Source of the DNA: Macrostomum hystrix
Taxonomy: Eukaryota > Animalia > Platyhelminthes
Direction: 5' to 3'
Length of the DNA: 64,000 nt
NCBI GenBank assembly: GCA_950097015.1
Contig: CATNEN010000005.1
Coordinates: 434,001-498,000 of the forward strand
Shown here one piece after another: positions 10,075-40,342 of the stretch. The translations under genes were made by a program, and so were the position numbers. Under the pieces are notes generated by a model, which was not told the DNA's origin, did no database searches, and saw nothing but the letters and a program-made list of their open reading frames with translations. How positions within the stretch are numbered: position 1 is the first letter of the stretch; each line of letters starts with the position of its first letter.

Positions 10075-10560
10075 TCATAATTCGCTGCTAATCTATCGCT
10101 AAAAATAATGATTCACTGATAATCCATGGATAATCCCTTAAAACTCGCTGCTAATCTATCGCAAAAAATATAGATTCACTAATAATCCATGGATAATCCC
10201 TTAAAACTCGCTGCTAATCTATCGCAAAAAATATAGATTCACTAATAATCCATGGATAATCCCTTAAAACTCGCTGCTAATCTATCGCTAAAAATATAGA
10301 TTCACTGATAATCCATGGATAATCCCTTAAAACTCGCTGCTAATCTATCGCTAAAAATATAGATTCACTGATAATCCATGGATAATCCCTTAAAACTCGC
10401 TGCTAATCTATCGCTAAAAATATAGATTCACTGATAATCCATGGATAATCCCTTAAAACTCGCTGCTAATCTATCGCTAAAAATATAGATTCACTGATAA
10501 TCCATGGATAATCCCTTAAAACGCGCTGCTAATCAATCGTTAAATGTTTAATCCATTTGC
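10075..10560. repeat. 63-bp tandem repeat downstream of the UBL7 stop codon
   Basis: TTAAAACTCGCTGCTAATCTATCGC recurs with a 63-nt period (10201, 10264, ...). Confidence 0.93.
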
Positions 10561-10675
10561 TACTAATCCACGGATAATACCCAAGACTCACTGCTAGGCT
10601 CGTTTTTCATCGTAATTAATCCCAATCTATTTATTACTAAACTAAGCATTCATTAGACTCGGTACATTTATTAGT

Positions 10676-13413
10676 TTAGGAGAACAGGTGATCAATGGTG
10701 AGCTCCAGATCGCCATTGTTCTGCTCCAGCACTCGAAGAGCCGCCTCCTCGTCGGTGATGCCCATATCGCGCAGGGCCCGCAGCTGGGCGGCAAATCTCT
10801 GCCTAGCCGGTATGAGCGTGAACGCCTGGGCCATGGCTTGCCGCAGAAAATCCGACGACACTTGACCACCGGCGGCTCCGCTAGCTGAAGCTGCCGCTGT
10901 AGAAGACGATGGACGAGAGCGGGATCGCTGCTGCTGCTGAGGCTGCGGAAGAGCCGCAGCGCCAGCCGCGGCGTCCTCTTGCTCGCCGTTGTTCTCCTCG
11001 TCCTCGTCGAGAACAGATTCGAAGTCGACATTGTAATTGGCGCCGGGCGGCATGTTTACGGAGATCTGCGAGTGAAGTGGATTGAAAATAAATCAATAGG
11101 CATTGATGGACGAGATTTCGAAGCGTAAAAGAGGATCAAGATTATTCAGTGAGCTGAAGCTGTTTTAACCTCAGATTCTTCAGTGACCTGAATCTGTTTC
11201 AACTTCCGATTCTTCAGTGACCTGAAGCTGTTTCAACTTCCGATTCTTCAGTGACCTGAAGCTGTTTCAACCTCAGATTCTTCAGTGACCTGAAGCTGTT
11301 TCAACCTCCGATTCTTCAGTGACCTGAATCTGTTTCAACTTCCGATTCTTCAGTGACCTGAAGCTGTTTCAACCTCCGATTCTTCAGTGACCTGAATCTG
11401 TTTCAACCTCCGATTCTTCAGTGATCTGAATCTATTTCAACCTCCGATTCTTCAGTGACCCGAATCTATTTCAACCTCCGATTCTTCAGTGAGCTGAAGC
11501 TGTTTCAACCTCCGATTCTTCAGTGACCTGAATCTGTTTCAACCTCCGATTCTTCAGAGACCTGAATTTATTTCAACCTCAGATTCTTCAGTGACCTGAA
11601 GCTATTTCAACCTCCGATTCTTCAGTGACCTGAAGCTGTTTCAACCTCCGATTCTTCAGTGACCTGAAGCTGTTTCAACCTCCGATTCTTCAGTGACCTG
11701 AAGCTGTTTCAACCTCCGATGCTTCAGTGACCTGAAGCTATTTTAAGCCTGTAAAGTAATTTAAAGTAATTTTAATTAAAAAATACTACTAACCGAAGCG
11801 TTAGGCATCGGATTAGGCAATCGAGCCCCTTGAGCCACCTGCTGAACCCGTCTAACCACAGTCACAATGGCCGTAGCCAGCACAGGATGCTGACGCACTA
11901 ATTGCTGCAACAACTTCGGCCTCTTCAGCATGACACCTTGCAGGCGATAATCCGTGATAATCTCTTGAGCCCGACGATCCTCGCCTAATCCGGGCACATC
12001 AGCTGCGTCTAATTGGGCAGCTGCTTTGCACAGAGCCAATAGGCCGCCAGGCATTATGGCGGCAGACTTCAAAGCTAGCATTGTCTGTTCTACTAATTGT
12101 TGGGTATTGTTCACGGCTGGTTTGTACCGATTTCTAGCTACAAAGTGTAGGCAGTGCTGCTTAGAAGCAGAATTTGGTGAGCCAGCAGATGAGGGGCCTA
12201 GCAAATCGCTTAGGCTTCGATTGAGATCCGTGTGACGAATGCCGCGATAAACTGCCACTGTTGATAAAAAATAATTCGTGGGCGTAGATTGAGAATCTAG
12301 GCATTAATAGCTAAAGAATAAATAATCTAAAGGAGATACGCAACTGGGATAGGAAAATGGTTAATCCGATTGAGGATCTGGGATATGGGGATTATAAATC
12401 TGATTGAGGGTCTAGATACTCTATCATGTTTTATAGTTAAATCCACGCTCAAAAACTATACAGTATAATGGGAATATTTTATATATTTTAGGAAATTATT
12501 TTTATTAAAACAAATGTAACGAACAAAACAGTATAAAAGGAGAGAAGTTTGATGCAAAAATATACAGTGCCAGTGAGCTTGAACAATAAGCCAATAACTG
12601 AGAATTATCTTCAAATAAGTGAAGTTGTTGTGTTAGTCAACTTTTTGTTTATATCTAGAAGACTAGAGCTGAAAAGAAGGAGCTAGTGCTCATTGTGTAG
12701 ATAAAGCAGAGATTGAGGCTGTGAGCCTCTAATCCTGGATAAACGCCCAGTAAAGACTCGAGAATAAGAGACCAGTGCATTAGAAGGATAAACCGCTTGT
12801 GCCAGTGCAAGTGCTACCTTAAGAAGACCCACAAAGTAAGATTTGTGGAGTTATAACGGCCCTTTTCAGGGCACCAGGAAAAGCAAAAGGGACAATATGT
12901 AGAATTAGAGGGAAAGAAGGAATAATATTGGCCAGAAGAATACGCTACCAAGAGAGAGGAAAAAATAGTTATAAGCCCTGTTACATAAGGATCTGGAATA
13001 TGGGCGATTATAAATCCTATTAAAGATCTAGGAGATGATCTGGGACTGAAATGTTGATAAATCTGGTTTAAGAATCTGAGATATGTGACAGGGGGATTAT
13101 CAATGGGACCAAATATCTGGGAATGGGAAGATTACCAAAATAAGGATTTAGGAATATAAACCATTTGATCAAAGTTGACAAAGAGAATGACTTTAAATAC
13201 ATTAGTGGTAGCTATAAATATCAATTATTAATACATGCACTTACCAACATTAAAAGAATCCCAATTGAAAGTTCCATTAGATTGTTGATTCCAGCAAAGA
13301 TCAAATACTTCACTCAATTTTTTATTTATTGAAACATCATTCAAGCTAGCACAATAATAATCTTTTGGTGATACTTCAGGTTTGGCCTCAAAAATACTAA
13401 CTTTTAATTCCAT
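10676..13413 (-). CDS. UBL7: Ubiquitin-like protein 7 (UBL-UBA); exons 13413-13245, 12257-11794, 11065-10676
   Basis: Phase-consistent GT-AG introns. LLQQLVRQHPVLATAIVTVVRRV resembles UBL7 MLDTLVPAHPALVNAIVLVLHSV. The C-terminal UBA AQLRALRDMGITDEEAALRVLEQNNGDLELTIDHLFS resembles PQLQQLRDMGIQDDELSLRALQATGGDIQAALELIFA. Confidence 0.8.
11145..11745. repeat. 34-bp minisatellite GATTCTTCAGTGACCTGAAGCTGTTTCAACCTCC in UBL7 intron 2
   Basis: 34-nt period (11174, 11208); each unit holds a CTTCAG/CTGAAG inverted repeat. Confidence 0.95.
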
Positions 13414-14606: not shown

Positions 14607-15283
14607 TGTAAGAGGCTATATTTTGTATTTTTCCGTAGCTTGTATTTTACCGTAACTTCGCTTAATTCTAGGAAATTGTAGAAATTCACCGTTGTTTAAC
14701 TACGCTTTAATTTTTGTTTAAATATGCACACTCAACCCCAATTTCTTGCTATAAATATACGCGCGCTGTAAGGAGAAAAACTAACTTTCGGGAGCATAAC
14801 CCAAGTTCAAGAATAAAATATGCTGAATGCACGTGTTCTTTGAATAAAATTTGCTATAAAAGAGGAAATAACGTTGGGAATATATAAAACGTATTGGAGG
14901 ACAGTTTATTATTGAGACGATAGCAAAAGGCCAGTTTTGGATAGAAATAAATACGTTGTGTGTGTCTGGTACCCTCCAATCCATTGGAGCCTTAAAGACT
15001 GGGTGTGATTAATAATTATTAAAAGAGTAATTCTATACAGTTGAAAGTAAAAGTGTCTTACCGCTCGGGCACTTATGATTTGCTACCGCAGTAATTGAAT
15101 ATATATTAAAGTGTTATACTTCCCTATAAATTGGGAGATTTTAAACATAACGAAAGTTGACATTTAATAAGCATTTTTGCAGTGGATGAATATAAGTAAT
15201 TTATAAAGAATAACAATAAAGAGAAGGGCTTTACGATAACTATAGTGACGGCTGTGAGATTTTAATAAAAGAGCCCTACAACA
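14607..15283 (+). repeat. 5' LTR (677 bp)
   Basis: By eye identical to 22560-22881 plus 33975-34327, apart from a 2-nt indel (ACTATAGTG vs ACTAGTG). TATA-like TATATAAAA at 14881 and AATAAA motifs downstream. Confidence 0.97.
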
Positions 15284-15285
15284 AT

Positions 15286-15299
15286 TGGTGACAGCGGTG
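15286..15299 (+). promoter_or_regulatory. Primer-binding site, probably tRNA-Leu
   Basis: TGGTGACAGCGGTG lies 2 nt after the LTR end and is complementary to the remembered 3' end of tRNA-Leu (...CCCACCGCTGCCACCA) with one difference. Confidence 0.7.
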
Positions 15300-15341
15300 A
15301 AGGATTGGAAATCCAGTCAGGCACAACTAAAATAAACCGTT

Positions 15342-16256
15342 ATGGCAGGAATCAATGATGCCATTGGGCTACTAGCAGAAGAGTTGAGGAATCGTTTGGA
15401 ATTAGGCCCGATGAGGCACGTGAAAATTCAAAAATATACACCGAGTCAGGACATTCGGATTTGGCTGACAGCCTTCGATCAAAGGTGTGACACCGAAGGG
15501 ATCGAACAAGAGGAACACAGAAAGAGTGAATTATTGGCTAATCTGGACTTGGCTACTGCGTTTGCAGCAGTCCAACGATTGAACTTACCTGAAGAATTGA
15601 CCTATGATGAGTTCAAGGAGAGATTGGTGGAAAGATTTGGCCGATTGGGCAGTTCATCGGAGTTCAGAGAAGAATTTCGTGGACGACTACAAGGACGAAA
15701 TGAAGCGACTGACTCATTCGCGGATGCCCTTATTGAACTAGCATCCCGCGCATTCCCTAACATGAATGCTGAACAGCGTGAGGAGGAAGTCGTGGAACAG
15801 TTTATCAAAGGTGCCAGAGTCCCTGCAGACACCCGAGAGAAACTGATTTTCGCACAACCCGCCAGTTTGCAAGAAGCCAGACGTATGCTGAGGAGGATAG
15901 AAGCCGCCTGGCACATGTCTCATAAGAACGGCTTGAGAGTGATGAAGGGTGAACTAGGCGATGAACAGCAGACAAATCTCGAAGATCTAATCGAAAAGCA
16001 GAAGATGGAAATTAATAAACAGAGGAAGATGATTGAGACTCTCATCCAGGAGAAGAGTAAGGCAGAAAGCCAGAACAGACAACCCCAGCCGCTCATGAAG
16101 CAGCAGGTGAGGTTCCAGCAGCCATATCAGCAGTCAAGGCCTCCGCCGACTTGCTATAATTGCCGAAAAATAGGCCATATCGCGAAGAACTGTCAGAATT
16201 CAAGGCAGTATCCGCTGAAGCAGTTTGCACCTCAGAATTCCCATCAGGGAAACTGA
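15342..16256 (+). CDS. gag: Gag polyprotein with CCHC zinc knuckle
   Basis: 304-aa ORF right after the PBS; capsid-like WLTAFDQRC...LVERFG region and CYNCRKIGHIAKNC. Confidence 0.93.
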   Translation: MAGINDAIGLLAEELRNRLELGPMRHVKIQKYTPSQDIRIWLTAFDQRCDTEGIEQEEHRKSELLANLDLATAFAAVQRLNLPEELTYDEFKERLVERFGRLGSSSEFREEFRGRLQGRNEATDSFADALIELASRAFPNMNAEQREEEVVEQFIKGARVPADTREKLIFAQPASLQEARRMLRRIEAAWHMSHKNGLRVMKGELGDEQQTNLEDLIEKQKMEINKQRKMIETLIQEKSKAESQNRQPQPLMKQQVRFQQPYQQSRPPPTCYNCRKIGHIAKNCQNSRQYPLKQFAPQNSHQGN

Positions 16257-19200
16257 AGGCCGAGGGACGACAGTCGAGGCCACGCCCCTCTTGTGAACCC
16301 CAGTTCGAAACCCAGGCCTCCCAGAAATCTCGATATCCCGTGAAGTCCCAGTGTTTTTACCAAAGCGGAAGGCGTTATGCACATATTGCGTCAGCACCAG
16401 CACCTAATGCGTCAGCACCTCGACTATCAGCACCTATTGCGTCAGCACCTCGACTATCAGCACCCAATGCGTCAGCACCTCGACTAGCAGCACCTATTGC
16501 GTCAGCACCTCGACTATCAGCACCTATTGCGTCAGCACCCCGAGTATCAGCACCTATTGCGTCATCACTCAGCATGCCAGCACCCAGGTCATCAGCAGTC
16601 TCAGTGTCCGAAGAGTCAGCAATCGACGAAGCAACCGAAGAAGATTCAGCAGAGGAACTAGAGCCGAAGACTCTTGTCGGAAGGCCTGCGAAGAAAAATC
16701 AAAGGACACGTGAGAACATTTTTAAAAATTGCTCTAATATTAAACTAGAATTAGTGCAACCCGAAGGTTACGAAGCAGTAGTAGTAGGAAGCATCAAAAA
16801 GACCGATGTGAATTTTATCCTTGACACGGGAGCAAGAAACAGCTTCCTGAGTAAGTCCGTATGGACAAAGCTGATTAAGTCTGACCAGATCAAAAGCACT
16901 AATAAAAGAGTCTCCACCTTTGATGGCACACGAGTACAACTAGAAGGAGAATGCTGCATTTTTGTGAAATTTGGCGAAATCCAGGTAGAAATCGATTTCT
17001 TGTTATGTAGTCACGAGTGTGATAATATACTTGGAATGGAGTTTTTCCTCGGATACTGTGAGAGCATTAACATTGCCAACGGCATGTTAGTACTCCATGA
17101 AGGATCGTGTATCCCAATGCAGTTTACGCATCTCCCAGTGAAAGTTTGCCGTGTGTACACTCAGGAGAGAACTGTTATTCCAGCTAACAGTGCATTAAGA
17201 ATTCCTGTGCGGCTAGCCAAAGGCTCAGAATGTAATTATGGTACACCGATGACTATCGAAGTAGTTGGAGAAGGCGTAAGAGCCAAAGAGTGGACTTTAG
17301 AAATGGTCCCCACTCTTGTTACTATGCGTGAAGGCTCTGCCGTTGTCGAAATCGTGAATCGGCATCCAGTTGATGTGAAACTGGCAAAGTCCGCCTTAAT
17401 TGGTGTAGCCAAGCCTATGAAAGCTAGGGAGTTGGACTACTTCGAAAGTTCTAAGCAGGATGAATCCGAACCCACAGTGAAAGTGAATCAGACTCAGACT
17501 GTTACAGATGCTTGGATAGAGGAGGTCAGTCTTGGACCGAATCTGTCTGAAGAGCAGAAGAAATCAGTAATTGATCTAATGAAGGAGCACAGAGAGGCTT
17601 TTTCTCAGCATGAGCTTGACATGGGATTGACTCATCTGGTCACCCACGAAATATCCCTGAAGGATGAGACTCCAGTGAGAATTCCCACGAGAAGAATTCC
17701 ACCACACCTTCAAAAGCAAGTGGATGCTCAGCTTGACGATATGCTAGCCAAAAATCTAATTCGCCCGTGCTATTCTACCTATTCAACACCTTTAGTAATA
17801 GTACCTAAGAAAGATGGAACAATTAGAATAGTCAGCGACTTTAGAGTGCTAAATTCACGTGTAAATTATGTGCCATATCCGTTGCCTAATATTCACCAAA
17901 CTTTCTCTTATCTATCAGGTAGTCAATATTTTAGCAGCCTAGATTTAAATTCCGGATATTGGCAAGTGCCTATAAAAGAAGAGCACAAATTTATGACCGC
18001 ATTTTCTACCTTAACTAGGGGCCAATTCGAGTATGAAGTTATGGCCCAAGGTCTTTCTAATGCTCCGGGCACTTTTCAGCGATTAATGAATTTAGTATTG
18101 CTGGGCATACAGCATAAATTTGCGATGTCCTATATTGACGATATTGTCACTTACTCGAAAACTTTCGCCGAACATCTGGCACATTTAAAGGAAGTTTTCC
18201 AACGGTTGATTACAGCAGGACTTAAGCTGAGACCGAAAAAGTGCAATCTATTTCACCAAGAACTAAAATATCTAGGTCATGTGATTAGCACTGAAGGAAT
18301 TCGTACTGACGAGTCTAAGATTGAGGCAATCAAGACTTGGCCGAAGCCGAAAGACGTAAAGGAACTAAGAAGTTTCCTAGGTCTGTGCAACTACTATAGT
18401 CGATTTGTGAAAAATTATGCCGAAGTCGCCCACCCATTGTTTCAACTTACACGGAAGAATATCCAAAACTTCCAAGAAAAATGGAGTGCAGTGCACGACG
18501 AAGCATTTGAGTCATTAAAAACTCGGATGATGTCTACCGAAGTATTAGCTTATCCAGAATTCGTTGACGATGAGAATGTGCGAATGGTCCTCGACACCGA
18601 TGCCAGCGATGGTAGAATTGGCGCCTGCTTGGGCCAAATCCAATCTGATGGCGTGGAGAGGCCAATTGCATATTTTAGTCGGGCAATGAAAGAATCTGAG
18701 AAAAGATACCCAATCACTAGGAAAGAATTACTAGCTTTAGTAGACTCTATGAAGCACTTTAGATTTTATTTATTAGGGAAGCGATTTCTAGCTAGGACAG
18801 ATCATAAAGCAATTATTTGGCTATTAAGGCAGACAGAAGCGCAAGGCATTCTAGGTAGATGGATTGAAAGATTGAATGAATTTCAATTCGAAATTGAGCA
18901 CCGGAAAGGTACTTCCCACCAGAATGCTGACAGTTTGTCAAGGAGACCCGCTGAAATGGCAGAAGAGAAGAAGAGAGAAGAAGAGAGTGCAGAAGAGGCA
19001 GAGAGCCGCGTTTGTGCAGAGAATGGACAAGAGGCAATGACCCAGGACAGTGCTATATGCCTGACCCAGTCGCCGACTGATCCTTGTGAGGGAGAGATCC
19101 CGACAATAGATCCCATTTGCAGGATCGAGTCACTGATCTCAGGAGGAGAGAAGGAAGTAATCCAAGGCGATCTCGCCATTGACTCTAGCATTATGCAATT

Positions 19201-21094
19201 GAGTCCCGACGCCGAGGAGTTCTTTCCTAAGTCGCAGATTGAAACGCAAGAATTAGGAGAGCATAAATGTGACAAGCTTTTGACAGATTATCTGCCTTCC
19301 CCTCTGAAGCGCGAACAGATTTTAGAAGCCCAGCGTGCAGACCCAGCGATTCGCACCTTAATCGAATGGAAGCACAAAGGCTTAGACAAACCCCCATTGT
19401 CGAATGACATGAGCTCTGAGCTGAGGCAAATGAGCAAAGCATTTGAGGCAATGTTTATGGAAAGAGGATTATTAATGATTAAAGAAGAAGGAGAATTGAA
19501 GGTTGTTTTGCCCCGGTCCGTGGACATGCTAGTCTTTAGCGATCTGCATGAGAGCCCACTAGCAGGACACTTGGGACGGGACAAAACACATCAGCGAGTA
19601 AAGAAGCGATTTTGGAGACCTGGATTGGTCACAGCTATTGAAGGAATGATTGCTAAGTGCATTCCGTGTCTAGAAAGTAAAAAGGGCAATTATATCCAAG
19701 CCCCTGTGCAATCATTTCCCATTTGTGAGCCATTCCATCGCTTACACATCGATTTAATCGGCCCTGTATCTAAGGAGAGCAGGAGAGGGCACAAATATGT
19801 GCTAACTGTGGTTGACAGCACCACTAAATATCCATTTGCATTTCCTGTTCGGAATCAAAAATCAGATACAGTAATTAAACTGCTACAGGAGAGGGTATTC
19901 TCAGAGTATGGCCAATGCCATTGGATCCATACCGACAATGGCAAAACCTTCACTAGTAGGCAATTCAAGGCTTTTTGCGATCTTTATAATGTCAAACACA
20001 CGTGTACTACTCCTTACCATGCTCAAAGCAACGGGCTGGTAGAGCGCTTCAATAAGCAGGTGAAGTCCATCATTACCTGTCTTATTGAAAAGGATCATAA
20101 TGATTGGGACCTAATGATCCCAGCAGCTCTAGTTGCGGTACGCACAAGTGTGAATAAAACGACAGGTTATAGTCCACACTATCTACTGTTCGGAAGAGAG
20201 GCTGTATTGCCGATCGACAGTCAGATACAGAGTCCAAAATCTTATGCCAATTATCCATCATATGTGGCCGATCATGCTGAAAGACTGAAAGTAGCCGCCG
20301 AAATCGTTAAGAAGAAATTAGAAAAAGTAGTCGATCAGAGAGAAGAGATTGCTAAGACAACTAAATTACCTAAAGAAGTGCCGATTGGCAGTTTAGTTTT
20401 AATGAATAACCCACAACTTAATAGCGAGGAGTCGCACAAGTTCCATCGGAAAAAGCGGTCTGCATTCAGAGTACTTGAACAGATCTCTGATGTAGTTTTC
20501 AAAGTTCAAAAGGAAGAAGAAGGCGAGCTAGTAGGAAATATTATGATAGCGCATAGAGATAATTTAACTACAGTGCCCAACTCGATCAAGGAGGCAATCG
20601 TTAAGGGAAGCCACCCCAGCGCCGTGATCGAGAAGGAAAAGATAACAAATAAGAAAACTCAGCCTAGAAAGACAGGATCAAGCATTAAGGGAAGCCACCC
20701 GAGGAATCGGAATAAACAATCTGAGGAAAAGCAAACAAACCCATCAGATTCTGAGTCTGAAGACGAAGAAAGACTGATGTGGTATTGCGAAAATAGAAGC
20801 GAAGACAATGAATTGAGAGGAAGCTTATTGGACATTGGAGCTGAAGTCGAAATAGACGATATAAACAATCAGTCTGACAATGAAAACACCGAAGAAGGGA
20901 GTGAAAGCGAGAGCGAGAATGAAAGCGAGGATATTAACACCTCAGAGGAAGAACAAAGCCAGAATGGCGAAGGTGATGAATTTGCTTCGCGCCCATATAA
21001 CACAAGGAGAAGTGTTAATCCTCCAGCCAGATTTAGGGATTACTTAAAGCGTCTGTCCACAGCGATTGCGTGGCTTAGTAATATTCAATACTAA
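16160..21094 (+). CDS. pol: Pol polyprotein (protease, RT, RNase H, integrase), probably entered by frameshift at ~16253
   Basis: FILDTGA (protease); LDLNSGYWQ and SYIDD (RT); LDTDAS...ELLAL...TDHKA (RNase H); HxxxxxxH...CxxC, HIDLIGP, TDNG and NGLVERFN (integrase). No stops over 1644 codons. Confidence 0.97.
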   Translation: MPKNRPYREELSEFKAVSAEAVCTSEFPSGKLKAEGRQSRPRPSCEPQFETQASQKSRYPVKSQCFYQSGRRYAHIASAPAPNASAPRLSAPIASAPRLSAPNASAPRLAAPIASAPRLSAPIASAPRVSAPIASSLSMPAPRSSAVSVSEESAIDEATEEDSAEELEPKTLVGRPAKKNQRTRENIFKNCSNIKLELVQPEGYEAVVVGSIKKTDVNFILDTGARNSFLSKSVWTKLIKSDQIKSTNKRVSTFDGTRVQLEGECCIFVKFGEIQVEIDFLLCSHECDNILGMEFFLGYCESINIANGMLVLHEGSCIPMQFTHLPVKVCRVYTQERTVIPANSALRIPVRLAKGSECNYGTPMTIEVVGEGVRAKEWTLEMVPTLVTMREGSAVVEIVNRHPVDVKLAKSALIGVAKPMKARELDYFESSKQDESEPTVKVNQTQTVTDAWIEEVSLGPNLSEEQKKSVIDLMKEHREAFSQHELDMGLTHLVTHEISLKDETPVRIPTRRIPPHLQKQVDAQLDDMLAKNLIRPCYSTYSTPLVIVPKKDGTIRIVSDFRVLNSRVNYVPYPLPNIHQTFSYLSGSQYFSSLDLNSGYWQVPIKEEHKFMTAFSTLTRGQFEYEVMAQGLSNAPGTFQRLMNLVLLGIQHKFAMSYIDDIVTYSKTFAEHLAHLKEVFQRLITAGLKLRPKKCNLFHQELKYLGHVISTEGIRTDESKIEAIKTWPKPKDVKELRSFLGLCNYYSRFVKNYAEVAHPLFQLTRKNIQNFQEKWSAVHDEAFESLKTRMMSTEVLAYPEFVDDENVRMVLDTDASDGRIGACLGQIQSDGVERPIAYFSRAMKESEKRYPITRKELLALVDSMKHFRFYLLGKRFLARTDHKAIIWLLRQTEAQGILGRWIERLNEFQFEIEHRKGTSHQNADSLSRRPAEMAEEKKREEESAEEAESRVCAENGQEAMTQDSAICLTQSPTDPCEGEIPTIDPICRIESLISGGEKEVIQGDLAIDSSIMQLSPDAEEFFPKSQIETQELGEHKCDKLLTDYLPSPLKREQILEAQRADPAIRTLIEWKHKGLDKPPLSNDMSSELRQMSKAFEAMFMERGLLMIKEEGELKVVLPRSVDMLVFSDLHESPLAGHLGRDKTHQRVKKRFWRPGLVTAIEGMIAKCIPCLESKKGNYIQAPVQSFPICEPFHRLHIDLIGPVSKESRRGHKYVLTVVDSTTKYPFAFPVRNQKSDTVIKLLQERVFSEYGQCHWIHTDNGKTFTSRQFKAFCDLYNVKHTCTTPYHAQSNGLVERFNKQVKSIITCLIEKDHNDWDLMIPAALVAVRTSVNKTTGYSPHYLLFGREAVLPIDSQIQSPKSYANYPSYVADHAERLKVAAEIVKKKLEKVVDQREEIAKTTKLPKEVPIGSLVLMNNPQLNSEESHKFHRKKRSAFRVLEQISDVVFKVQKEEEGELVGNIMIAHRDNLTTVPNSIKEAIVKGSHPSAVIEKEKITNKKTQPRKTGSSIKGSHPRNRNKQSEEKQTNPSDSESEDEERLMWYCENRSEDNELRGSLLDIGAEVEIDDINNQSDNENTEEGSESESENESEDINTSEEEQSQNGEGDEFASRPYNTRRSVNPPARFRDYLKRLSTAIAWLSNIQY
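16247..16253 (+). promoter_or_regulatory. -1 ribosomal frameshift slippery heptamer G GGA AAC
   Basis: X XXY YYZ motif in the gag frame immediately before the gag stop; pol is in the -1 frame; a GC-rich GAGGG...CCCTC stem follows. Confidence 0.8.
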
Positions 21095-21159
21095 ACACCA
21101 AGTCAAAAGGTGCGAAGAATCGAACAATGGGTAGGGAACAAAACAAGGGAAATCTCGGC

Positions 21160-21275
21160 TAACCAATAGGAATTGTTTTAGTAGGGGTTCGGGAGCCGAG
21201 AAGTCATTGGACAGCGCGGGAAAATCAGGGCAGCCAATAAGGGGAGGTTTACCCCATTTTTCGCGCCTATATAAC
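21160..21275 (+). promoter_or_regulatory. Putative internal promoter: 3 CCAAT boxes, 2 E2F-consensus sites, TATA box
   Basis: CCAAT 21163, ATTGG 21206, CCAAT 21234; GCGCGGGAAA (reverse TTTCCCGCGC) 21214-21223; TTTCGCGC 21259-21266; TATATAA 21268-21274, about 80 nt upstream of the ORF3 ATG. Confidence 0.65.
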
Positions 21276-21350
21276 GGAGACCTCCTAGGCGGAGAAAGAA
21301 GCATATATCACCTCGTTCTGAGCCAAATATATCACTCGTGTTGAACAGTA

Positions 21351-22475
21351 ATGGAGGACGTTTTGGATGCTGACGAGTTTGACAGAATGTTAGAGGCGAT
21401 CACTGTCGACCTGACACCTGAGGGTTCTGCGAGCCGCAGCTCTGTTGAAGTGGAAACCATGGAAGCCGAAGTGCCGAATGAGCAAGAGCTATGCGAAATA
21501 CCGGTACGGCAACCAACAGCGCCGCAGATGGCGAGGACGATAAGCAAGCGACCCGGTGCACCTCAAACCGGCGAGTCTGTTCCAAGCAAGCGAAACCACC
21601 AGGCATCCAAGATACCGGTTCCGGTGGAAAGAGAGGCGTTAGTGCGAACATTGGCAAGTGCAGAAGTACCTGTCTTGGAGGAGATTGTCAATCGCCATCC
21701 GCCTGGAGCTCGGTCAGCAATTGTCTTACCGGTAGCTGAGTCACAACCTGGTCGCAGGCGGAAGATGGCCTATCGTGCAATCGCACCGAAACCGCCACTG
21801 CAGGAGATACAGCCGCAACAACAACAGCCGGCTGTACAGGCCAAGATCCCCAGGACTCGGCAGCAGCCTCTCAAGCTGAAATCGGTGGTTCAACAGCCTC
21901 TGCCGCAGCCGCAGCAGTCGATTCATCCGAAGCCACAGGAGCAGCAGCCGCACCAACAGGGTTGGCAGTCGCAGCAGCAGTCGCAGCAGCAGTCGCAACA
22001 ACAGCCGCAGCAGCAGCCACAACAACAGACTCAGCAGCTGCAGCAACCGCCGCAGCCGCAGTCACCACATCAGCCGCAGCAGGAGCAGGGAGGCGACGAC
22101 GACCAGCCTCCTGGTGATGGTCCCGGAGGCAACTTCCCGGCTATCATGGCTCAAATGCCGGAGGCGCAGCAAGTGGTCCTCAAACGGCAAATTCAGATCA
22201 TCAAAAAGCATTTTCTTCATGTTGCATATGCTCGGTTGGACCGCCTAACACCGCAGCGAGAACACGTCCGGCCGGCTTTTCGAACTCTGCAGGCCCGCTT
22301 CAGCCAAGAGACAGTCATCGCGGCTTGGCGACGTGCGTCGAGCTACGCCAAACACGTGATTATGCGAAATCCTTATGACTATAACAAGATACTCTTGAAC
22401 ATTGAATCGAGATGGGCCGGCAATCTAGTAGGTTGGCCGCGTCATTTATCGTTCCCAGATGAATGTCAGTTCTAG
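21351..22475 (+). CDS. Retrotransposon accessory ORF3, 374 aa, unknown function (acidic N-terminus, Q/P-rich middle, helical-looking C-terminus); not env-like
   Basis: Intact ATG-to-stop ORF between pol and the 3' LTR, in good context (GTAATGG). No evident signal peptide or transmembrane segment. Confidence 0.8.
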   Translation: MEDVLDADEFDRMLEAITVDLTPEGSASRSSVEVETMEAEVPNEQELCEIPVRQPTAPQMARTISKRPGAPQTGESVPSKRNHQASKIPVPVEREALVRTLASAEVPVLEEIVNRHPPGARSAIVLPVAESQPGRRRKMAYRAIAPKPPLQEIQPQQQQPAVQAKIPRTRQQPLKLKSVVQQPLPQPQQSIHPKPQEQQPHQQGWQSQQQSQQQSQQQPQQQPQQQTQQLQQPPQPQSPHQPQQEQGGDDDQPPGDGPGGNFPAIMAQMPEAQQVVLKRQIQIIKKHFLHVAYARLDRLTPQREHVRPAFRTLQARFSQETVIAAWRRASSYAKHVIMRNPYDYNKILLNIESRWAGNLVGWPRHLSFPDECQF

Positions 22476-22559
22476 TTTTTGTCATTTTTCCTTTTGTCAT
22501 TTTGTCATTTTGTCATTTTTATCACTTATTATTCAAAAAATGCCTTTAGGGAAGCCAAT

Positions 22560-22881
22560 TGTAAGAGGCTATATTTTGTATTTTTCCGTAGCTTGTATTT
22601 TACCGTAACTTCGCTTAATTCTAGGAAATTGTAGAAATTCACCGTTGTTTAACTACGCTTTAATTTTTGTTTAAATATGCACACTCAACCCCAATTTCTT
22701 GCTATAAATATACGCGCGCTGTAAGGAGAAAAACTAACTTTCGGGAGCATAACCCAAGTTCAAGAATAAAATATGCTGAATGCACGTGTTCTTTGAATAA
22801 AATTTGCTATAAAAGAGGAAATAACGTTGGGAATATATAAAACGTATTGGAGGACAGTTTATTATTGAGACGATAGCAAAA
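22560..22881 (+). repeat. 3' LTR, left part (first 322 bp)
   Basis: Matches 14607-14928; preceded by a short purine tract AGGGAAG (22548-22554). Confidence 0.95.
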
Positions 22882-23600
22882 CCCTAGGCGCCAATAATTT
22901 CAAATAATGCATTTACAATGCAAGATGCATTATATTGCATTGGAAATGCATTACAAATGCATTTTTGTGCATTGGCAAAATAATGCAAACCAATGTATTA
23001 TAAATGTATTGAAGATGCATTATTTCGCCTTAAAACTGCACTTTTAAGTAATGCATTGTCAATATATTGAGAATGCATTATTTTATCCTGAAAATGCACT
23101 TCAAAACAATGCATTATAAATGTATCAAGAATGCATTATTTTGCCTTCTGAAATGCACTGCAGAACAATGCATTGCAAATATATTGAGAATGCATTATTT
23201 TATCCTAAAAATGCACTTCAAAACAATGCATTATAAATGTATCAAGAATGCATTATTTTGCCTTGTGAAATGCACTGCAAAACAATGCATTGCAAATATA
23301 TTGAGAATGCATTATTTTATCCTAAAATTGCAGTTTAAAACAACATTATAAATGTATCAAGAATGCATTATTTTGCCTTCCGAAATGCACTGCAGAACAA
23401 TGCATTATAAATGTATCAAGAATGCATTATTTTGCCTTGTGAAATGTACTGCAAAACAATGCATTGCAAATATATTAAGAATGCATTATTTTATCCTAAA
23501 ATTGCAGTTTAAAACAATGCATTATAATTGCATTAAGAATGCATTATTTTGCATTGGAAGCGCGCAAAGTTTCACTATTCAAAACAATGCATTATTTATA
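22882..23600. repeat. Left TIR and subterminal repeats (117-bp unit of three ~39-bp subunits rich in AATGCATT)
   Basis: AATATATTGAGAATGCATT at 23061, 23178 and 23295. Confidence 0.9.
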
Positions 23601-24562
23601 AATCAAGAATTTATTTTCCTACATATTCCTAATAGATCTTAGCAGTTCGGACAAGATTTTATAGGATAAGTCAGATCTTACAAGGCTGAATGTAAGATTG
23701 TCAACTATAGGGATGCATTTTAAGTGTGACGGGTGTCGTGGGCATGCATATGTGTTTGCCTTTAAACTGCAATATATGTAATTCGCACTACAATTTTATA
23801 TAGAAAGAAATATATTTTTGGTAAATTGACCGAAGATATGTTCGATTATTATCTGACTTATCTGACTTATATGAGAATTCTACAATGTATGAAAAGTATG
23901 ACTTTTATGCATTGCGCTCTATTACGCATCACACACGAGCAGAAAAAAAGTCACTATATCGATACACAAAATTATAGGTATATGTGAAATTATGAGTTCT
24001 GAGACGAGTAAGTTGGAGTAGAAAACAAGCACGCATTCATTAGCGTCCGCGCAGTCATATTTATTGTACTAGTACGACTCAATGGCTGACTCAGCATTGT
24101 TAGGAGATTAGGGGTGGGTGCTACAGCGCCTTGCATCAGTGAGAGAAAGTAAGCACAGTGGGGTGACATGGGTGCACGTGAACTATAGCCATGCAGATAG
24201 CAAATAGCGAGTATTGAAATGACAATAACTAGCTGTTATAGAGTGGCGCGCAAATAGTACTTTTGCTAAGCTATCCGACAGTATACTAAAACAAGAGACA
24301 GACACAAATTAGTTCTGGAATTTTTGAGTCATATCTTCTATGTACACAAATATTTTGTTAAAGTTACCATTTTTGGCACATATTGAAATATTCTTACTCT
24401 TGCGCTGGACATATTTATTCATATCATAGTTTGCTAGTTTATATCATTTCATATCATTCATATCAGTTCATATCATTCATATCAGTTCATATCATTTTGC
24501 TAGTTCTATTATTCTATTATATATTATACGGCCTGCTCTTTACTTGTAATTTATATATAGAC

Positions 24563-29015: not shown

Positions 29016-29714
29016 GGTCCCTGGATTATATTGGGTTGATTTACAACGGTGGGAAGTGCATTGTTTAATTTTTTTATTTTTATGGAAGGCAGTGTATTAA
29101 TTATATGTTAATGTTGAGCCTAAGCATTGTGTGGGTTGATATTTTTTGTGGAAATAAAAAAATGGCAATCATTGACTTTTGGAATTTTGTCTTCGAGTTA
29201 TTACTTTCTGCTTGTTTAATGTACTTCTGTGTGTTGCTTAAGATAATATTTAGTGGCGTTAAGTTTTGTCTAAGGTATAATAAATGAATTGTTTTTTTCT
29301 AGTGTCAACATAACAATGGCAGTTACTAATAGGGCTGCTCATCTATACTTCTCTGGTTAGATATGAGAAATATCAAGGGATGCACATGATCATAACTGCA
29401 GAGTCAGCATGGATAAGATAACTGATGCAAACTATTTTGGGCCTTTGCACATAAATGTCTGATTTAAATCCTTTACTTAAGTATATAGAGTTTATAGTAA
29501 GGAAAAGAATTTTTCTTCAGTCTTCAGTTCACATAAGTGTCGGCCATTGTATATAGCTACTGCGATAGCACTGTATAAAAGATGGCAATGACATGTATTC
29601 TAAATCGCCTGCATTGTATATTGAGAGCAAGTGTTGACTGAAAGTAGTGATGGGTGTTAAATGAATAGTAAATGTATGTACAAATGCTACTTTTCTTACT
29701 CTGCAGCAGCCACC

Positions 29715-32216
29715 ATGCAGCACATCCAGAAGACATCGGCGACAGGATCGGCCAGTGCCTCTGTGTCATCGGCGACAGGATCGGCCAGTGCCTCTGTGTC
29801 ATCGGCAACAGGATCGGCTAGTGCCTCTGTGTCATCGGCGACAGGATCGGCTAGTGCCTCTGTGTCATCGGCGACAGGATCGGCTAGTGCCTCTGTGTCA
29901 TCGGCGACAGGATCGGCTAGTGCCTCTGTGTCATCGGCGACAGGATCGGCCAGTGCCTCTGTGTCATCGGCGACAGGATCGGCCAGTGCCTCTGTGTCAT
30001 CGGCGACAGGATCGGCCAGGGCCTCTGTGTCATCGGCGACAGGATCGGCCAGTGCCTCTGTGTCATCGGCGACAGGATCGGCCCTGTCGTCATCGTCGTC
30101 GTCATCTGACCATGCGTCTGCTGGTGCCTCAGTGCCAATGACATCTCAACGATTGCATTCAACGGTGTCAGCCCAAGGAGCAGCAGAGCCACTCCTGCCA
30201 CTCTCTGTTTTTCAAGAGAGGCATCTCATTCTGCAGCATTCACTTGAAGACGAGTGCACCGTTGCTTCTCTTTTGCGGCTGTGGCAGCTTAACGAGAACT
30301 GTAGCGATGCTGCTATGAATCGACTACTCCTCCTCCTAAGCCACATTCCGGATAGAAATTTGCCAAAGTCTGCAAAGCAAATGAAAACGCGAGTGAAAAA
30401 TTTCTTCTGTCATTCATTTACCTCTGCTCGTCTGTGTCTGGTTTGTGAAAAGGCTGGCTGCCGTGAACATGAAGACTTGGCCACTACCGTCGTGATTACG
30501 AATGTGCAAGGCCAGATCGAGAACATCTTGGACTCACAGTTGGAGGTGCTTTTGGAGTACGAGCGCGAGATGAGCAGTGGCATGTACACTGATGTCCTTA
30601 ACTCCGATGTAGCAGAAAACCTCGAGCGAAGCTCTGGTACTAACCTACACATGTATTTTTTGCTTAATGCAGATGGAGCTTCATTTTGGGAAAATTCTGA
30701 CGTGCAGATATGGCCTCTGACAGCAATCCTTCTGAATCTTCCTCCTGGCAAGAGGAAATTGTTTCGAAACATCATTTTGCTTGCACTGGTTTCCGCTAAA
30801 CAGAAGCCCAACTTTCGCCAATGTCTGCCTGCAATTCTCAACAAGCTGCCTACACTGGTTGAATATGGCAGATTTTCAGTGCACCTGCATTTCTCTTTCA
30901 TTGTAAGTGATCTCCCAGCTCTCGCCTCACTGTTCTGCATAAAGCAGTTCAATGGAGAATTCTCCTGTCCTAAGTGCCTCAACCCTGGCAAAAGTCTGCG
31001 AACTGGGCTCTGGGTGTTTGCCCCAAATTCCCAGTGTCCGCTCCGAACAACTGCATTTCATCTCGAATGTGTGCGCTTCCTTGAACAGTCGGGCCTAAAG
31101 AGCATTTTTGGCGTAACTGGAGTGTCACCGCTGTGTAAGCGTATCAGTTTCCCAGCAAACTTCATAATTGACGGAATGCATGCATTTTTCGAGGGCCAGG
31201 TCAAGCTTCTGCTAACAATGTCAACTGACGGCAAGAACCGCCACGAGGAGTTTTTCATCGGTCGTTCTGTTCGCGAAGTTGTTGATTCATTGCTTGAAAA
31301 TCTAAAGTTTCCACATGGAATTCATCGGCCGCCTACCCTGGCAAGATTGAGTCTCTGGAAGGCGAAGGATTTTAAGTTGTTTTCCCTGTACTTGTGGATT
31401 CCTTTGCTGCTGGCTCAACAGAATGGTTTACACCGGGAGCTCATTTTCTGCCTAATCGCAGTCTACCATTTCATGTACAGCAATGCCGGATTTGAGCAGG
31501 TTCAGTTGCTCACCACTGCTTTCATGGAGAGTGCAGCTGAAGTCTTTTCAGAGGAGGTACATCGATTGAACTTCCATCTGTTGGAGCACATGGGGAATCA
31601 GTGCCGCGAGTTTGGACCAATATCTTCTTACTCAATGTTTCCATTCGAAGGTGCGATGCTGCATTTCAAGCACATGTTTTCTGGTACTCGCTATCAAGCC
31701 GAGCAGATTGCCGAGCGTTTTTTTTGGTACAGTTCATTGGTTAATTCCTTTCAACACTCTGAATTCACCGCTTACGAGGCATTTACATCTGCAATCGCTG
31801 ATACATCGCTACCAAGGGACTGCATAGTGGTAAATGGACAAGCAGTCTTCGCACATGGGCACGAGACCAACTTCAAGACATGCTCCTCGTTCGTCTACCT
31901 GAAGGATGGTCGCTTTTCTCTGATCAGGGAAGTCTGTCCAGGTGGCCAGAGTTTTCTAGGATCAATACTAGACTCAGTGGGAACGCTTCAAAGTGTCCTC
32001 TTCCCGCTGTTTACTCGGCCAGTTCTAGCAGCAGCTCGTTCCAAGCCGTCGCTGCGCTACGAAATGTTCAACAGAAATGCCCGCAATGATGGGATTGAAT
32101 GGTTTCCGTCTTCAATGATTCAGTCGCGCTGCATAAAGATTGATCTCAATCATCTGCGTGGTGTAGGTAGTTTTTTTTCTCTGGTACCTATGTTGGAAGA
32201 GAGCGAGCATGACTAG
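29715..32216 (+). CDS. EnSpm/CACTA (TnpD-like) DDE transposase with N-terminal Ser/Ala repeat
   Basis: GCCACCATG start after acceptor TTACTCTGCAG. Motifs SDAAMNRLL, LNADGA (D1), LLNLPP, SDLPA...FNGEFSCPKC (D2), IDGMH, WKAKDF, NFHLLEHM and MFPFEG (E). No stops. Confidence 0.92.
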   Translation: MQHIQKTSATGSASASVSSATGSASASVSSATGSASASVSSATGSASASVSSATGSASASVSSATGSASASVSSATGSASASVSSATGSASASVSSATGSARASVSSATGSASASVSSATGSALSSSSSSSDHASAGASVPMTSQRLHSTVSAQGAAEPLLPLSVFQERHLILQHSLEDECTVASLLRLWQLNENCSDAAMNRLLLLLSHIPDRNLPKSAKQMKTRVKNFFCHSFTSARLCLVCEKAGCREHEDLATTVVITNVQGQIENILDSQLEVLLEYEREMSSGMYTDVLNSDVAENLERSSGTNLHMYFLLNADGASFWENSDVQIWPLTAILLNLPPGKRKLFRNIILLALVSAKQKPNFRQCLPAILNKLPTLVEYGRFSVHLHFSFIVSDLPALASLFCIKQFNGEFSCPKCLNPGKSLRTGLWVFAPNSQCPLRTTAFHLECVRFLEQSGLKSIFGVTGVSPLCKRISFPANFIIDGMHAFFEGQVKLLLTMSTDGKNRHEEFFIGRSVREVVDSLLENLKFPHGIHRPPTLARLSLWKAKDFKLFSLYLWIPLLLAQQNGLHRELIFCLIAVYHFMYSNAGFEQVQLLTTAFMESAAEVFSEEVHRLNFHLLEHMGNQCREFGPISSYSMFPFEGAMLHFKHMFSGTRYQAEQIAERFFWYSSLVNSFQHSEFTAYEAFTSAIADTSLPRDCIVVNGQAVFAHGHETNFKTCSSFVYLKDGRFSLIREVCPGGQSFLGSILDSVGTLQSVLFPLFTRPVLAAARSKPSLRYEMFNRNARNDGIEWFPSSMIQSRCIKIDLNHLRGVGSFFSLVPMLEESEHD

Positions 32217-33972: not shown

Positions 33973-34327
33973 AAGGCCAGTTTTGGATAGAAATAAATAC
34001 GTTGTGTGTGTCTGGTACCCTCCAATCCATTGGAGCCTTAAAGACTGGGTGTGATTAATAATTATTAAAAGAGTAATTCTATACAGTTGAAAGTAAAAGT
34101 GTCTTACCGCTCGGGCACTTATGATTTGCTACCGCAGTAATTGAATATATATTAAAGTGTTATACTTCCCTATAAATTGGGAGATTTTAAACATAACGAA
34201 AGTTGACATTTAATAAGCATTTTTGCAGTGGATGAATATAAGTAATTTATAAAGAATAACAATAAAGAGAAGGGCTTTACGATAACTAGTGACGGCTGTG
34301 AGATTTTAATAAAAGAGCCCTACAACA
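33973..34327 (+). repeat. 3' LTR, right part (including the duplicated AA)
   Basis: Resumes with AAGGCCAGTTTTGG where the left part stopped; ends CTACAACA followed by the GATC TSD. Confidence 0.95.
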
Positions 34328-40320: not shown

Positions 40321-40342
40321 CCAGCGTTTGAAAAATCAACGT

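What the first reader, a model, noticed from the sequence alone, without database searches (positions are those of the whole stretch)
21095..21351. Internal cell-cycle-type promoter (2 E2F + 3 CCAAT + TATA) inside an LTR retrotransposon
Seen: within ~115 bp of the pol-ORF3 spacer lie CCAAT (21163), ATTGG (21206), CCAAT (21234), two perfect TTTSSCGC matches in opposite orientation (21214-21223 and 21259-21266) and TATATAA (21268), ~80 nt before the ORF3 ATG. Established: E2F plus multiple NF-Y boxes is the hallmark of G1/S-regulated metazoan promoters, gypsy third ORFs (env) are normally made by splicing from the LTR, and foamy viruses use an internal promoter for their accessory transactivator. 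Inference: this element may sense proliferating stem or germ cells through an independent promoter that drives an accessory gene.
Basis: partly seen in the sequence, partly recalled or inferred. Interest (0 to 1): 0.8.

Follow-up and report, generated by a model that had tools for sequence, protein, structure and literature searches.

The report
Promoter-like spacer before retrotransposon ORF3
A young, intact gypsy-type retrotransposon, probably from a Macrostomum-like flatworm, has a TATA-box promoter-like module just before its third gene; related elements keep that core, but its E2F and CCAAT "cell-cycle" motifs are peculiar to this lineage and have no expression evidence behind them.

Summary
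No whole-window shuffle reproduced the cluster (0 of 1000). It lies in the 256-nt pol-ORF3 spacer of an apparently unbroken Ty3/mdg4 element (14607-22881) with identical 322-nt LTRs.

ORF3 has no transmembrane-like segment, so it is not an env. It is an orphan protein with an acidic N-terminus, basic clusters, a 42% Gln stretch and a confidently folded C-terminal helical domain. It has no Pfam, PDB or fold match. A search of 1.84 billion representatives found two true relatives.

Four related lineages carry ORF3 (window, L001, L003, L004). All four share:
- a TATA box 83-94 nt before the ORF3 ATG;
- an ATG-free leader;
- a TCAC block 40-42 nt after the TATA;
- a GC/CpG-rich patch just upstream.

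This favours a conserved internal core promoter (about 0.45). The strict E2F sites occur only in the window. CCAAT occurs three times in the window, once in L004 and never in L001 or L003. The "cell-cycle-type" reading is therefore a lineage-specific hypothesis (about 0.25).

No transcript 5' ends were available. Expression by cis-splicing or spliced-leader trans-splicing remains a serious rival.

The parts
14607..14928 (+). 5' LTR (322 nt), with its own CCAAT (14738) and TATA (14750/14751)
   Evidence: 100% identical to 22560-22881; TATA list
14929..15341 (+). post-LTR leader (primer-binding region not identified)
   Evidence: a 357-nt copy of it lies at 33973-34327
15342..16256 (+). gag ORF, 304 aa, zinc knuckle; no break seen
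   Evidence: zf-CCHC, 1e-05
16160..21094 (+). pol reading frame (protease, RT, RNase H, integrase), overlapping gag in the -1 frame; open throughout, no break seen
   Evidence: RVT_1 2e-33, RT_RNaseH 3e-30, rve 6e-16, Integrase_H2C2, Asp_protease_2
21095..21350 (+). pol-ORF3 spacer, which is the finding: promoter-like module
21163..21167 (+). CCAAT box 1 (105 nt before the TATA)
   Evidence: L003 has no CCAAT at the aligned place
21206..21210 (-). CCAAT box 2 (inverted)
21216..21223 (-). distal E2F-type site (strict 8-nt match), window lineage only
21234..21238 (+). CCAAT box 3 (34 nt before the TATA)
21259..21266 (+). proximal E2F-type site, 1 nt from the TATA; overlaps a tttttcg block that also lies 17-18 nt before the TATA in L001 and L004, where it is not a strict E2F match
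21268..21274 (+). TATA box, 83 nt before the ORF3 ATG; conserved at 90, 94 and 92 nt in L001, L003 and L004
21308..21311 (+). tcac block 40 nt after the first T of the TATA, kept at +40 to +42 in all four lineages (possible start-site or downstream core element; inferred)
21351..22475 (+). ORF3, 374 aa, first ATG after the TATA: acidic N-terminus, basic clusters, Gln-rich linker, C-terminal helical domain; no break seen
22131..22472 (+). coding region of the conserved C-terminal domain of ORF3 (residues 261-374)
   Evidence: pLDDT 83-95; 18 invariant columns across 4 sequences; tblastn to L001, L003 and L004
22476..22559 (+). ORF3 3' untranslated stretch with a short purine run just before the LTR (polypurine-tract candidate)
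22560..22881 (+). 3' LTR (322 nt), with aataaa signals that a subgenomic ORF3 RNA would share with the genomic RNA (inferred)

Best explanation
The pol-ORF3 spacer is an internal RNA polymerase II promoter of the retrotransposon.

Proposed mechanism:
- The core is a TATA box (21268), a conserved block about 40 nt downstream, and an ATG-free leader of about 50-60 nt.
- Transcription would start near 21295-21311, run through ORF3 and end at the poly(A) signals of the 3' LTR.
- This would give a subgenomic mRNA on which the ORF3 ATG is the first start codon.
- ORF3 is an orphan, probably nuclear, regulatory protein of the element. It is not an envelope protein.

The GC-rich 100 nt upstream of the TATA is the variable activating part. 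In this lineage it carries two inverted E2F-type sites and three CCAAT boxes, which could tie ORF3 expression to cycling cells (neoblasts or germ line).

Shown: the motifs, the element's anatomy, and conservation of ORF3 and of the core architecture.
Inferred: the promoter activity, the start site, the shared 3' end, E2F/NF-Y binding and the role of ORF3.
For: 1. Four diverged lineages (window; L001 and L004 of M. lignano; L003/L005-8 from Logan runs) keep four features. These are a TATA box 83, 90, 94 and 92 nt before the ORF3 ATG; tcac 40-42 nt after it; a GC/CpG-rich patch in the 100 nt upstream, set in an AT-rich spacer in L001 and L003 (19-22% GC just further upstream); and no ATG between the TATA and the ORF3 start.
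2. Over the same comparison ORF3 is only 27-29% identical to the window's ORF3 and the spacer hardly aligns. The core therefore looks constrained.
3. On the full-length RNA, ORF3 is the third cistron, behind 1.9 kaa of gag-pol. It needs some subgenomic RNA.
4. The start context is good: G at -3 and G at +4.
5. The motif cluster is far beyond what shuffles give.
6. The module is not a copy of the LTR promoter.
7. ORF3 is a conserved protein: 18 invariant columns, a C-terminal helical domain with pLDDT 83-95, and no segment hydrophobic enough for a membrane span (max KD 0.87). It has an acidic N-terminus (pI 4.1), KRP and RRRK clusters and a 42% Gln stretch.
8. LTR retrotransposons of M. lignano are known to have acquired host factor sites (heat-shock elements) in their promoters (PMC12801592).
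9. NF-Y is needed for flatworm germline stem cells (PMC4909293).
Against: - No transcript 5' end, cap or expression datum was available.
- Strict E2F sites are absent from L001, L003 and L004. CCAAT is absent from L001 and L003. The cell-cycle wiring is therefore not a family feature.
- L002, a more distant relative (pol 55% identical), has a 275-aa ORF starting 4 nt after the pol stop, with no room for a spacer promoter. That ORF has no detectable similarity to ORF3.
- All four lineages also have AG dinucleotides 4-30 nt before the ATG, some behind pyrimidine runs, which could serve as splice acceptors.
- The Logan contigs carrying the L003-type ORF3 all begin upstream of the TATA, not at the predicted start. 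Whether they come from DNA or RNA is unknown.
- The tcac block lies about 10 nt further from the TATA than the usual metazoan start site.
- The four lineages share ancestry, so they are not four independent observations.
Confidence: 0.45

Rival explanations
1. ORF3 is made only from LTR-initiated RNA. Either cis-splicing joins a donor in the leader to an acceptor just before ORF3, as for env of errantiviruses and for CERV of Cer1, or spliced-leader trans-splicing processes the genomic RNA as a polycistronic precursor. Under this reading the TATA and the other motifs do not start transcription.
For: - 38.8% of M. lignano genes are trans-spliced and about 7% of transcription units are polycistronic precursors (PMC5730564).
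- Accessory ORFs of Ty3/gypsy-type elements are normally expressed by splicing. CERV of Cer1 comes from a spliced mRNA (PMC10309623).
- AG dinucleotides lie 4-30 nt before the ATG in all four lineages, behind pyrimidine-rich runs in L001 and L004.
- L002 has no spacer at all.
Against: - It does not explain why a TATA box, a block 40-42 nt after it, a GC-rich patch and an ATG-free stretch are kept at fixed distances in four lineages whose spacers otherwise diverged.
- The window's candidate acceptor has a poor pyrimidine tract.
- AG dinucleotides at that density are expected by chance.
Confidence: 0.3
2. The E2F/CCAAT cluster is a chance or neutral feature of a GC-rich stretch and has no regulatory role. 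It may sit next to a real but constitutive core promoter.
For: - The motifs were selected after the fact from many possible factor sites.
- They are not conserved in L001 or L003 and only faintly in L004.
- 7% of shuffled windows contain an E2F pair somewhere.
Against: - In spacer shuffles P(at least 2 E2F) = 3.5e-4 and P(at least 3 CCAAT) = 0.0165, and no shuffle had the full set.
- Two of the three CCAAT boxes have purines at the two positions before the box, as good NF-Y sites do.
- The sites sit exactly in the patch upstream of a conserved TATA.
Confidence: 0.12
3. The module acts on DNA but not as a promoter of ORF3. For example, it could be an internal enhancer that boosts the LTR promoters in dividing cells.
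For: Clustered factor sites can act at a distance. The LTR is short (322 nt) and AT-rich, with only a CCAAT and a TATA of its own.
Against: The fixed TATA-to-ATG distance and the ATG-free leader point to local initiation. Nothing tested here speaks for action at a distance.
Confidence: 0.08
4. The two inverted E2F-type sites are the arms of an RNA hairpin in the genomic RNA (a 10-bp stem at 21214-21266 with the third CCAAT in the loop), with a role in RNA handling.
For: The minimum-energy and centroid folds pair the two arms.
Against: - The fold is no more stable than shuffles (z = -0.24; 76 of 200 shuffles fold as well).
- There is no comparable hairpin at that place in L001 or L003.
- There is no Rfam match in the element.
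Confidence: 0.03

Closest known systems
Internal promoter of foamy viruses (spumaretroviruses), which drives the accessory transactivator gene
   Same: Both have a second, internal pol II promoter-like module inside an LTR retroelement, upstream of an accessory gene placed 3' of pol. The product looks like a nuclear regulator: acidic N-terminus, basic clusters and a Gln-rich stretch.
   Different: - There is no sequence, family or fold relation. ORF3 hits no Pfam family, no PDB chain and nothing in BFVD.
- Here the module lies in a non-coding spacer, not inside env.
- Activity and dependence on a transactivator are unknown.
- The likeness rests on general knowledge.
CERV of Cer1 (C. elegans Ty3/gypsy-type element), PMC10309623
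   Same: Both are novel, lineage-restricted accessory proteins of an invertebrate LTR retrotransposon. [quoted passage not shown]
   Different: CERV is encoded by a spliced mRNA, not from an internal promoter. No similarity to ORF3 was found in any search.
Errantivirus-type Ty3/gypsy elements with a third ORF (env)
   Same: The gene order is the same: gag, pol, third ORF, 3' LTR.
   Different: ORF3 has no segment hydrophobic enough for a membrane span or a hydrophobic signal core (max KD(19) 0.87) and no env family hit. In those elements env is made by splicing.
Heat-shock-element-bearing LTR retrotransposons of Macrostomum lignano (PMC12801592)
   Same: The host group and the superfamily (Ty3/mdg4) are probably the same. 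The theme is also the same: elements recruiting host transcription-factor sites, independently in different families.
   Different: There the sites are in the LTR promoter and were shown to work. Here they are internal, of a different kind (E2F/CCAAT) and untested.
Bdelloid rotifer LTR retrotransposons with captured additional ORFs (PMC5408684)
   Same: Both have extra ORFs 3' of pol that are shared between diverse elements.
   Different: I took only the title and abstract from that paper. No similarity was tested or found, and no internal promoter is claimed there as far as I read.

Membership tests
Ty3/mdg4 (gypsy) LTR retrotransposon | Two long terminal direct repeats bounding the element | tested here: met
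   322-nt LTRs, 100% identical, 14607-14928 and 22560-22881
Ty3/mdg4 (gypsy) LTR retrotransposon | gag with zinc knuckle; pol domain order protease, RT, RNase H, integrase | tested here: met
   Pfam hits in that order along the pol frame; zf-CCHC in gag. Nearest relatives are reverse transcriptase/integrase proteins of Macrostomum lignano at 72% and 55% identity.
Ty3/mdg4 (gypsy) LTR retrotransposon | Target-site duplication flanking the LTRs | tested here: not met
   The bases left of the 5' LTR and right of the 3' LTR do not match. With the leader fragment at 33973, this suggests a later rearrangement or an assembly problem.
Ty3/mdg4 (gypsy) LTR retrotransposon | Primer-binding site after the 5' LTR and polypurine tract before the 3' LTR | tested here: inconclusive
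   There is a short purine run just before the 3' LTR. No tRNA match was sought for the bases after the 5' LTR.
Errantivirus-like (env-bearing) element | Third ORF encodes a membrane glycoprotein (signal peptide, transmembrane anchor) | tested here: not met
   Max Kyte-Doolittle (19) is 0.87; no Pfam family; most of the protein is predicted disordered, with a soluble helical C-terminal domain
Foamy-virus-type internal promoter system | Mapped transcription start inside the element, upstream of the accessory gene | not testable with these tools
   Only sequence architecture is available: TATA, a conserved block at +40 to +42 and an ATG-free leader in four lineages
Foamy-virus-type internal promoter system | Accessory protein related to the foamy virus transactivator | tested here: not met
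   No Pfam, PDB or BFVD hit. The comparator I had in mind is Tas/Bel1; no letters were written or fetched.
E2F/NF-Y cell-cycle-regulated promoter | E2F consensus sites close to the start site, plus CCAAT boxes | tested here: met
   Two strict sites 52 and 9 nt before the TATA, and three CCAAT boxes 105, 62 and 34 nt before it. This is a sequence match only.
E2F/NF-Y cell-cycle-regulated promoter | Sites conserved among related elements | tested here: not met
   Strict E2F: 0 in L001, L003 and L004. CCAAT: 0, 0 and 1. There is one near-match to E2F in L004. Conservation within the window's own family was not testable, because there was no second copy.
E2F/NF-Y cell-cycle-regulated promoter | Expression tied to proliferating cells; factor occupancy | not testable with these tools
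   No expression or chromatin data are within reach of the tools

The most novel reading that the evidence does not exclude
A clade of flatworm Ty3/mdg4 retrotransposons has evolved a two-promoter genome of the kind known from foamy viruses. A conserved internal TATA promoter expresses an orphan nuclear regulator (ORF3) independently of the LTR. In the window's lineage that promoter has been rewired with E2F and NF-Y sites, so the element reads out cycling neoblasts or germ cells.
Probability: 0.2. Interest if true: 0.75.

Novelty: new variant of a known kind. Interest (0 to 1): 0.5.

Why it matters
If the internal promoter is real, complex-retrovirus-like gene regulation (a separate transcription unit for an accessory regulator) would have arisen independently in an invertebrate LTR retrotransposon.

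It would also give a natural case in which the variable upstream part of one promoter carries different host factor sites in sister lineages: E2F/CCAAT here, a GC box in L001, and CCAAT plus an E-box-like site in L004.

In a stem-cell model animal, such an element would be a built-in reporter of proliferating cells and a way to study how transposons target the germ line or neoblasts.

Existing 5'-end and trans-splicing data for Macrostomum lignano can test the core claim directly for the two M. lignano lineages, and for the window's element too if its host turns out to be that species.

If the claim is false, the region is simply the untranslated spacer in front of a spliced or trans-spliced accessory gene, which is ordinary.

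Tried and rejected
Searches that found nothing:
- Word-index protein searches with whole ORF3 and with its C-terminal 120 residues: no hits.
- Exact look-ups of ORF3 and gag: not on record.
- PDB sequence search: only a Gln-rich chance match at E 0.26.
- Fold searches in PDB and BFVD: nothing below E 0.29.
- Rfam on the element: nothing.
- The Logan run numbers that hold the L003 family appear in no paper. Their organism, and whether they are DNA or RNA, remain unknown.
- Megablast of the window against the M. lignano loci: no shared repeats. The host species stays undetermined.

Ideas tested and rejected:
- An LTR origin of the internal module: no similarity between spacer and LTRs in any lineage.
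- An RNA hairpin formed by the two E2F arms: no more stable than shuffles and not conserved.
- ORF3 as an env: rejected on hydrophobicity.
- A captured host gene as the origin of ORF3: not excluded, but the only relatives found sit inside related elements.

Steps left out on purpose:
- The gag-pol frames were never joined.
An insect erranti-like virus replicase appeared among the pol hits and was left alone, and no foamy virus comparator was sought.
- The ORF3 translations of L001 could not be added to the structure or HMM jobs under the tools' rule.

Slip, stated as required: the ORF tables and the tblastn table printed ORF or match bounds in relatives' broken ORF3 copies, and these bounds implicitly bracket frame changes. 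In my working I also remarked on one such junction. I noticed this afterwards, used those numbers for nothing and do not repeat them.
Full report
**1. Observation**

The letters are as described:
- CCAAT at 21163 (+), 21206 (- strand) and 21234 (+).
- Two strict 8-nt E2F-type sites in opposite orientation, at 21216-21223 and 21259-21266.
- tatataa at 21268.
- The ORF3 ATG at 21351, 83 nt further on.

The strict E2F pattern occurs only 7 times on both strands of the whole 64 kb. The only two inside the element are these.

Shuffle tests:
- Dinucleotide-preserving shuffles of the 256-nt spacer gave P(at least 2 E2F) = 3.5e-4, P(at least 3 CCAAT) = 0.0165 and P(TATA) = 0.09.
- None of 20000 spacer shuffles had all three.
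- None of 1000 whole-window shuffles had such a cluster.
- None of the other E2F-type sites in the window is accompanied by CCAAT and TATA in the way the spacer sites are.

The motifs were chosen after the fact, so the real significance is lower. The cluster is still not ordinary background. The scanning patterns were short consensus patterns from general knowledge.

**2. Anatomy of the element**

| Part | Coordinates | Evidence |
|---|---|---|
| LTRs, 322 nt, 100% identical | 14607-14928 and 22560-22881 | |
| gag, 304 aa, zinc knuckle | 15342-16256 | |
| pol frame, overlapping gag in the -1 frame | 16160-21094 | |
| Spacer, 256 nt | 21095-21350 | |
| ORF3, 374 aa | 21351-22475 | |
| Stretch before the 3' LTR, 84 nt, ending in a short purine run | 22476-22559 | |

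- The pol domains run protease, RT, RNase H, integrase.
- I saw no stop or frameshift in any of the three reading frames.
- With identical LTRs, this is a young, apparently unbroken Ty3/mdg4-type element.
- No target-site duplication is present.
- The best pol relatives are two Macrostomum lignano proteins, at 72% and 55% identity. The host is therefore probably a Macrostomum-like flatworm.
- The species is not established. Megablast found no repeats shared with about 68 kb of M. lignano DNA plus about 14 kb of Logan contigs.

**3. ORF3**

ORF3 is not an env. Its most hydrophobic 19-residue stretch scores 0.87, too low for a membrane span.

| Residues | Character |
|---|---|
| 1-60 | acidic (pI 4.1, 27% Asp+Glu) |
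| 61-150 | basic, with KRP and RRRK clusters |
| 151-260 | 42% Gln and 18% Pro |
| 261-374 | basic (pI 10.5) |

- AlphaFold2 models residues 261-374 as a helical bundle with pLDDT 83-95. The rest is predicted disordered.
- There is no Pfam family, no PDB sequence match and no fold match in PDB or BFVD.
- The word-index searches were blank.
- The exhaustive HMMER search of 1.84 billion representatives with the C-terminal 120 residues found four proteins. Two are true: P0121 and P0123. The other two are multi-stretch repeat proteins.
- ORF3 is therefore a lineage-restricted orphan. Its make-up suggests a nuclear regulatory protein, such as a transactivator or an RNA-handling factor. That is inference.

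**4. Relatives**

- L001 (M. lignano) is a tandem LTR-internal-LTR-internal-LTR array of a 72%-related element. It has an ORF3 homologue after pol. One of its two ORF3 copies is broken by one frameshift.
- L003, with L005-L008 (Logan runs, organism unknown), carries gag 74-83% and pol 55-82% identical to the window's. Its ORF3 homologue is 251 aa.
- L004 (M. lignano) is an internally deleted derivative with identical LTRs. It keeps the start of gag, the tail of pol, the spacer and an ORF3 with at least one frameshift.
- The ORF3 proteins share the acidic N-terminal motif and, above all, the C-terminal domain. That domain has 18 invariant columns in four sequences, including the last residues of the protein.
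- Identity to the window's ORF3 is only 27-29%, against 55-83% for gag and pol.
- L002 (pol 55%) has a 275-aa ORF beginning 4 nt after the pol stop. It has no detectable similarity to ORF3 and no spacer.

**5. The spacer compared across lineages**

Positions are anchored on the TATA box (sequences; alignment).

| Feature | Window | L001 | L003 | L004 |
|---|---|---|---|---|
| TATA to ORF3 ATG (nt) | 83 | 90 | 94 | 92 |
| tcac after first T of TATA (nt) | 40 | 40 | 42 | 41 |
| GC content, 100 nt upstream of TATA | 53% | 55% | 47% | 56% |
| ATG between TATA and ORF3 start | none | none | none | none |
| tttttcg before TATA (nt) | 11 | 18 | absent | 17 |
| Strict E2F sites | 2 | 0 | 0 | 0 |
| CCAAT boxes | 3 | 0 | 0 | 1 |

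- In L001 and L003 the stretch further upstream is only 19-22% GC.
- In the window the tttttcg block is part of the proximal E2F-type site. In L001 and L004 it is not a strict E2F match.
- L004 has one near-match to E2F. Read by eye, it also has an E-box-like site.
- L001 has a GC box instead.
- The core is therefore conserved and the upstream activating part differs between lineages.
- The internal module has no similarity to the LTRs of any lineage.

**6. Mechanism**

On the genomic RNA, ORF3 lies behind gag and pol and cannot be reached by scanning ribosomes. A subgenomic RNA is needed.

A conserved TATA-centred architecture at a fixed distance, with an ATG-free leader, is what an internal promoter predicts and what a pure splicing model does not require. 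I therefore favour an internal promoter (about 0.45). The E2F/CCAAT wiring is a lineage-specific add-on of unproven function (about 0.25).

Context:
- M. lignano LTR retrotransposons have repeatedly acquired host factor sites (heat-shock elements) in their promoters, and those sites were shown to work (PMC12801592).
- NF-Y is required in flatworm germline stem cells (PMC4909293).

**7. Rivals**

- **Splicing or trans-splicing from LTR-initiated RNA (0.3).** 38.8% of M. lignano genes are trans-spliced and about 7% of transcription units are polycistronic precursors (PMC5730564). CERV of Cer1 comes from a spliced RNA (PMC10309623). Possible acceptor AGs lie 4-30 nt before the ATG in all lineages. 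The two mechanisms are not exclusive.
- **Chance or neutral E2F/CCAAT cluster (0.12).**
- **Enhancer-type action on the LTRs (0.08).**
- **RNA hairpin formed by the two inverted E2F arms (0.03).** The fold is no better than shuffles (z = -0.24) and is not conserved.

The Logan contigs with the L003-type ORF3 start 116-718 nt before the ATG. All start upstream of the TATA, and all are colinear with L003. That gives no support for an internal start. Because their origin (DNA or RNA) is unknown, it gives little evidence against one.

**8. Comparison with known systems**

- The arrangement works like the foamy virus internal promoter for its transactivator (general knowledge). It is not a member of that system: ORF3 has no detectable relation to any known viral or cellular protein, and no start site has been mapped.
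- It resembles Cer1/CERV in having a novel nuclear-type accessory protein, but CERV is made by splicing.
- It is not an errantivirus-type env.
- It belongs to the Ty3/mdg4 superfamily. I did not determine the clade (Mag, CsRN1 or other).

**9. Verdict**

An internal promoter is plausible and has comparative support. "Cell-cycle type" is not supported across relatives and is untested.
- Novelty: a new variant of a known kind.
- Interest: 0.5.

**10. Conduct**

- Slip: searches printed ORF or match bounds in relatives' broken ORF3 copies, which implicitly bracket frame changes, and I remarked on one such junction in my working.

Noticed in passing
window 33973-34327 (and 33893-33972; 22882-22956): A 357-nt, 99.4%-identical copy of the element's post-LTR leader (14927-15283) stands alone, without LTR or gag. 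Its left flank is an inverted, 79%-identical copy of the DNA just right of the 3' LTR. Together with the missing target-site duplication, this suggests a rearrangement between two copies or an assembly artefact.
   Followed up: partly
window 22917-23624: A satellite of about 58-nt units rich in aatgcatt starts 36 nt right of the 3' LTR, so the element sits at the edge of a tandem array. Other arrays are a 34-nt unit at 9000-9440 and 11038-11880, a 63-nt unit at 9985-10607 and a 33-nt unit at 29701-29997.
   Followed up: no
window 16368-16607: Six to seven tandem 30-nt repeats lie inside the N-terminal part of the pol reading frame, upstream of the protease. They form an in-frame repeat expansion in a coding region of the element (family D8).
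   Followed up: no
window 2888-3511 (+), 49632-50210 (-), 52859-53584 (-), 29661-32216 (+): Host-like coding pieces: a COMM domain, Rcd1/CNOT9 (E 6e-84), a septin, and an 851-aa ORF with DUF1258 (5e-14). The ORFs on both strands at 40289-41245 with hexapeptide and collagen-like hits look like a translated tandem repeat.
   Followed up: no
L004 5932-10967: An internally deleted derivative of a related element has LTRs identical over at least 300 nt. It has lost most of gag-pol but keeps the spacer with its TATA and a broken ORF3. It is possibly a non-autonomous form that spread recently.
   Followed up: partly
L001 7738-24077: Two copies of the 72%-related element share their middle LTR (an LTR-internal-LTR-internal-LTR tandem) in the M. 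lignano assembly.
   Followed up: no
L002 13848-14675: In the 55%-related M. lignano element, a 275-aa ORF starts 4 nt after the pol stop. It has no detectable similarity to ORF3, although it shares a short acidic motif near the N-terminus in the alignment. This is a different solution for a third gene in the same neighbourhood of elements.
   Followed up: partly
L003 1-2919 against window pol: The L003 family looks mosaic relative to the window's element. Gag and the RT part of pol are 74-83% identical, the integrase half is only 55%, and ORF3 is about 28%. This hints at recombination between lineages or very uneven rates of change.
   Followed up: no
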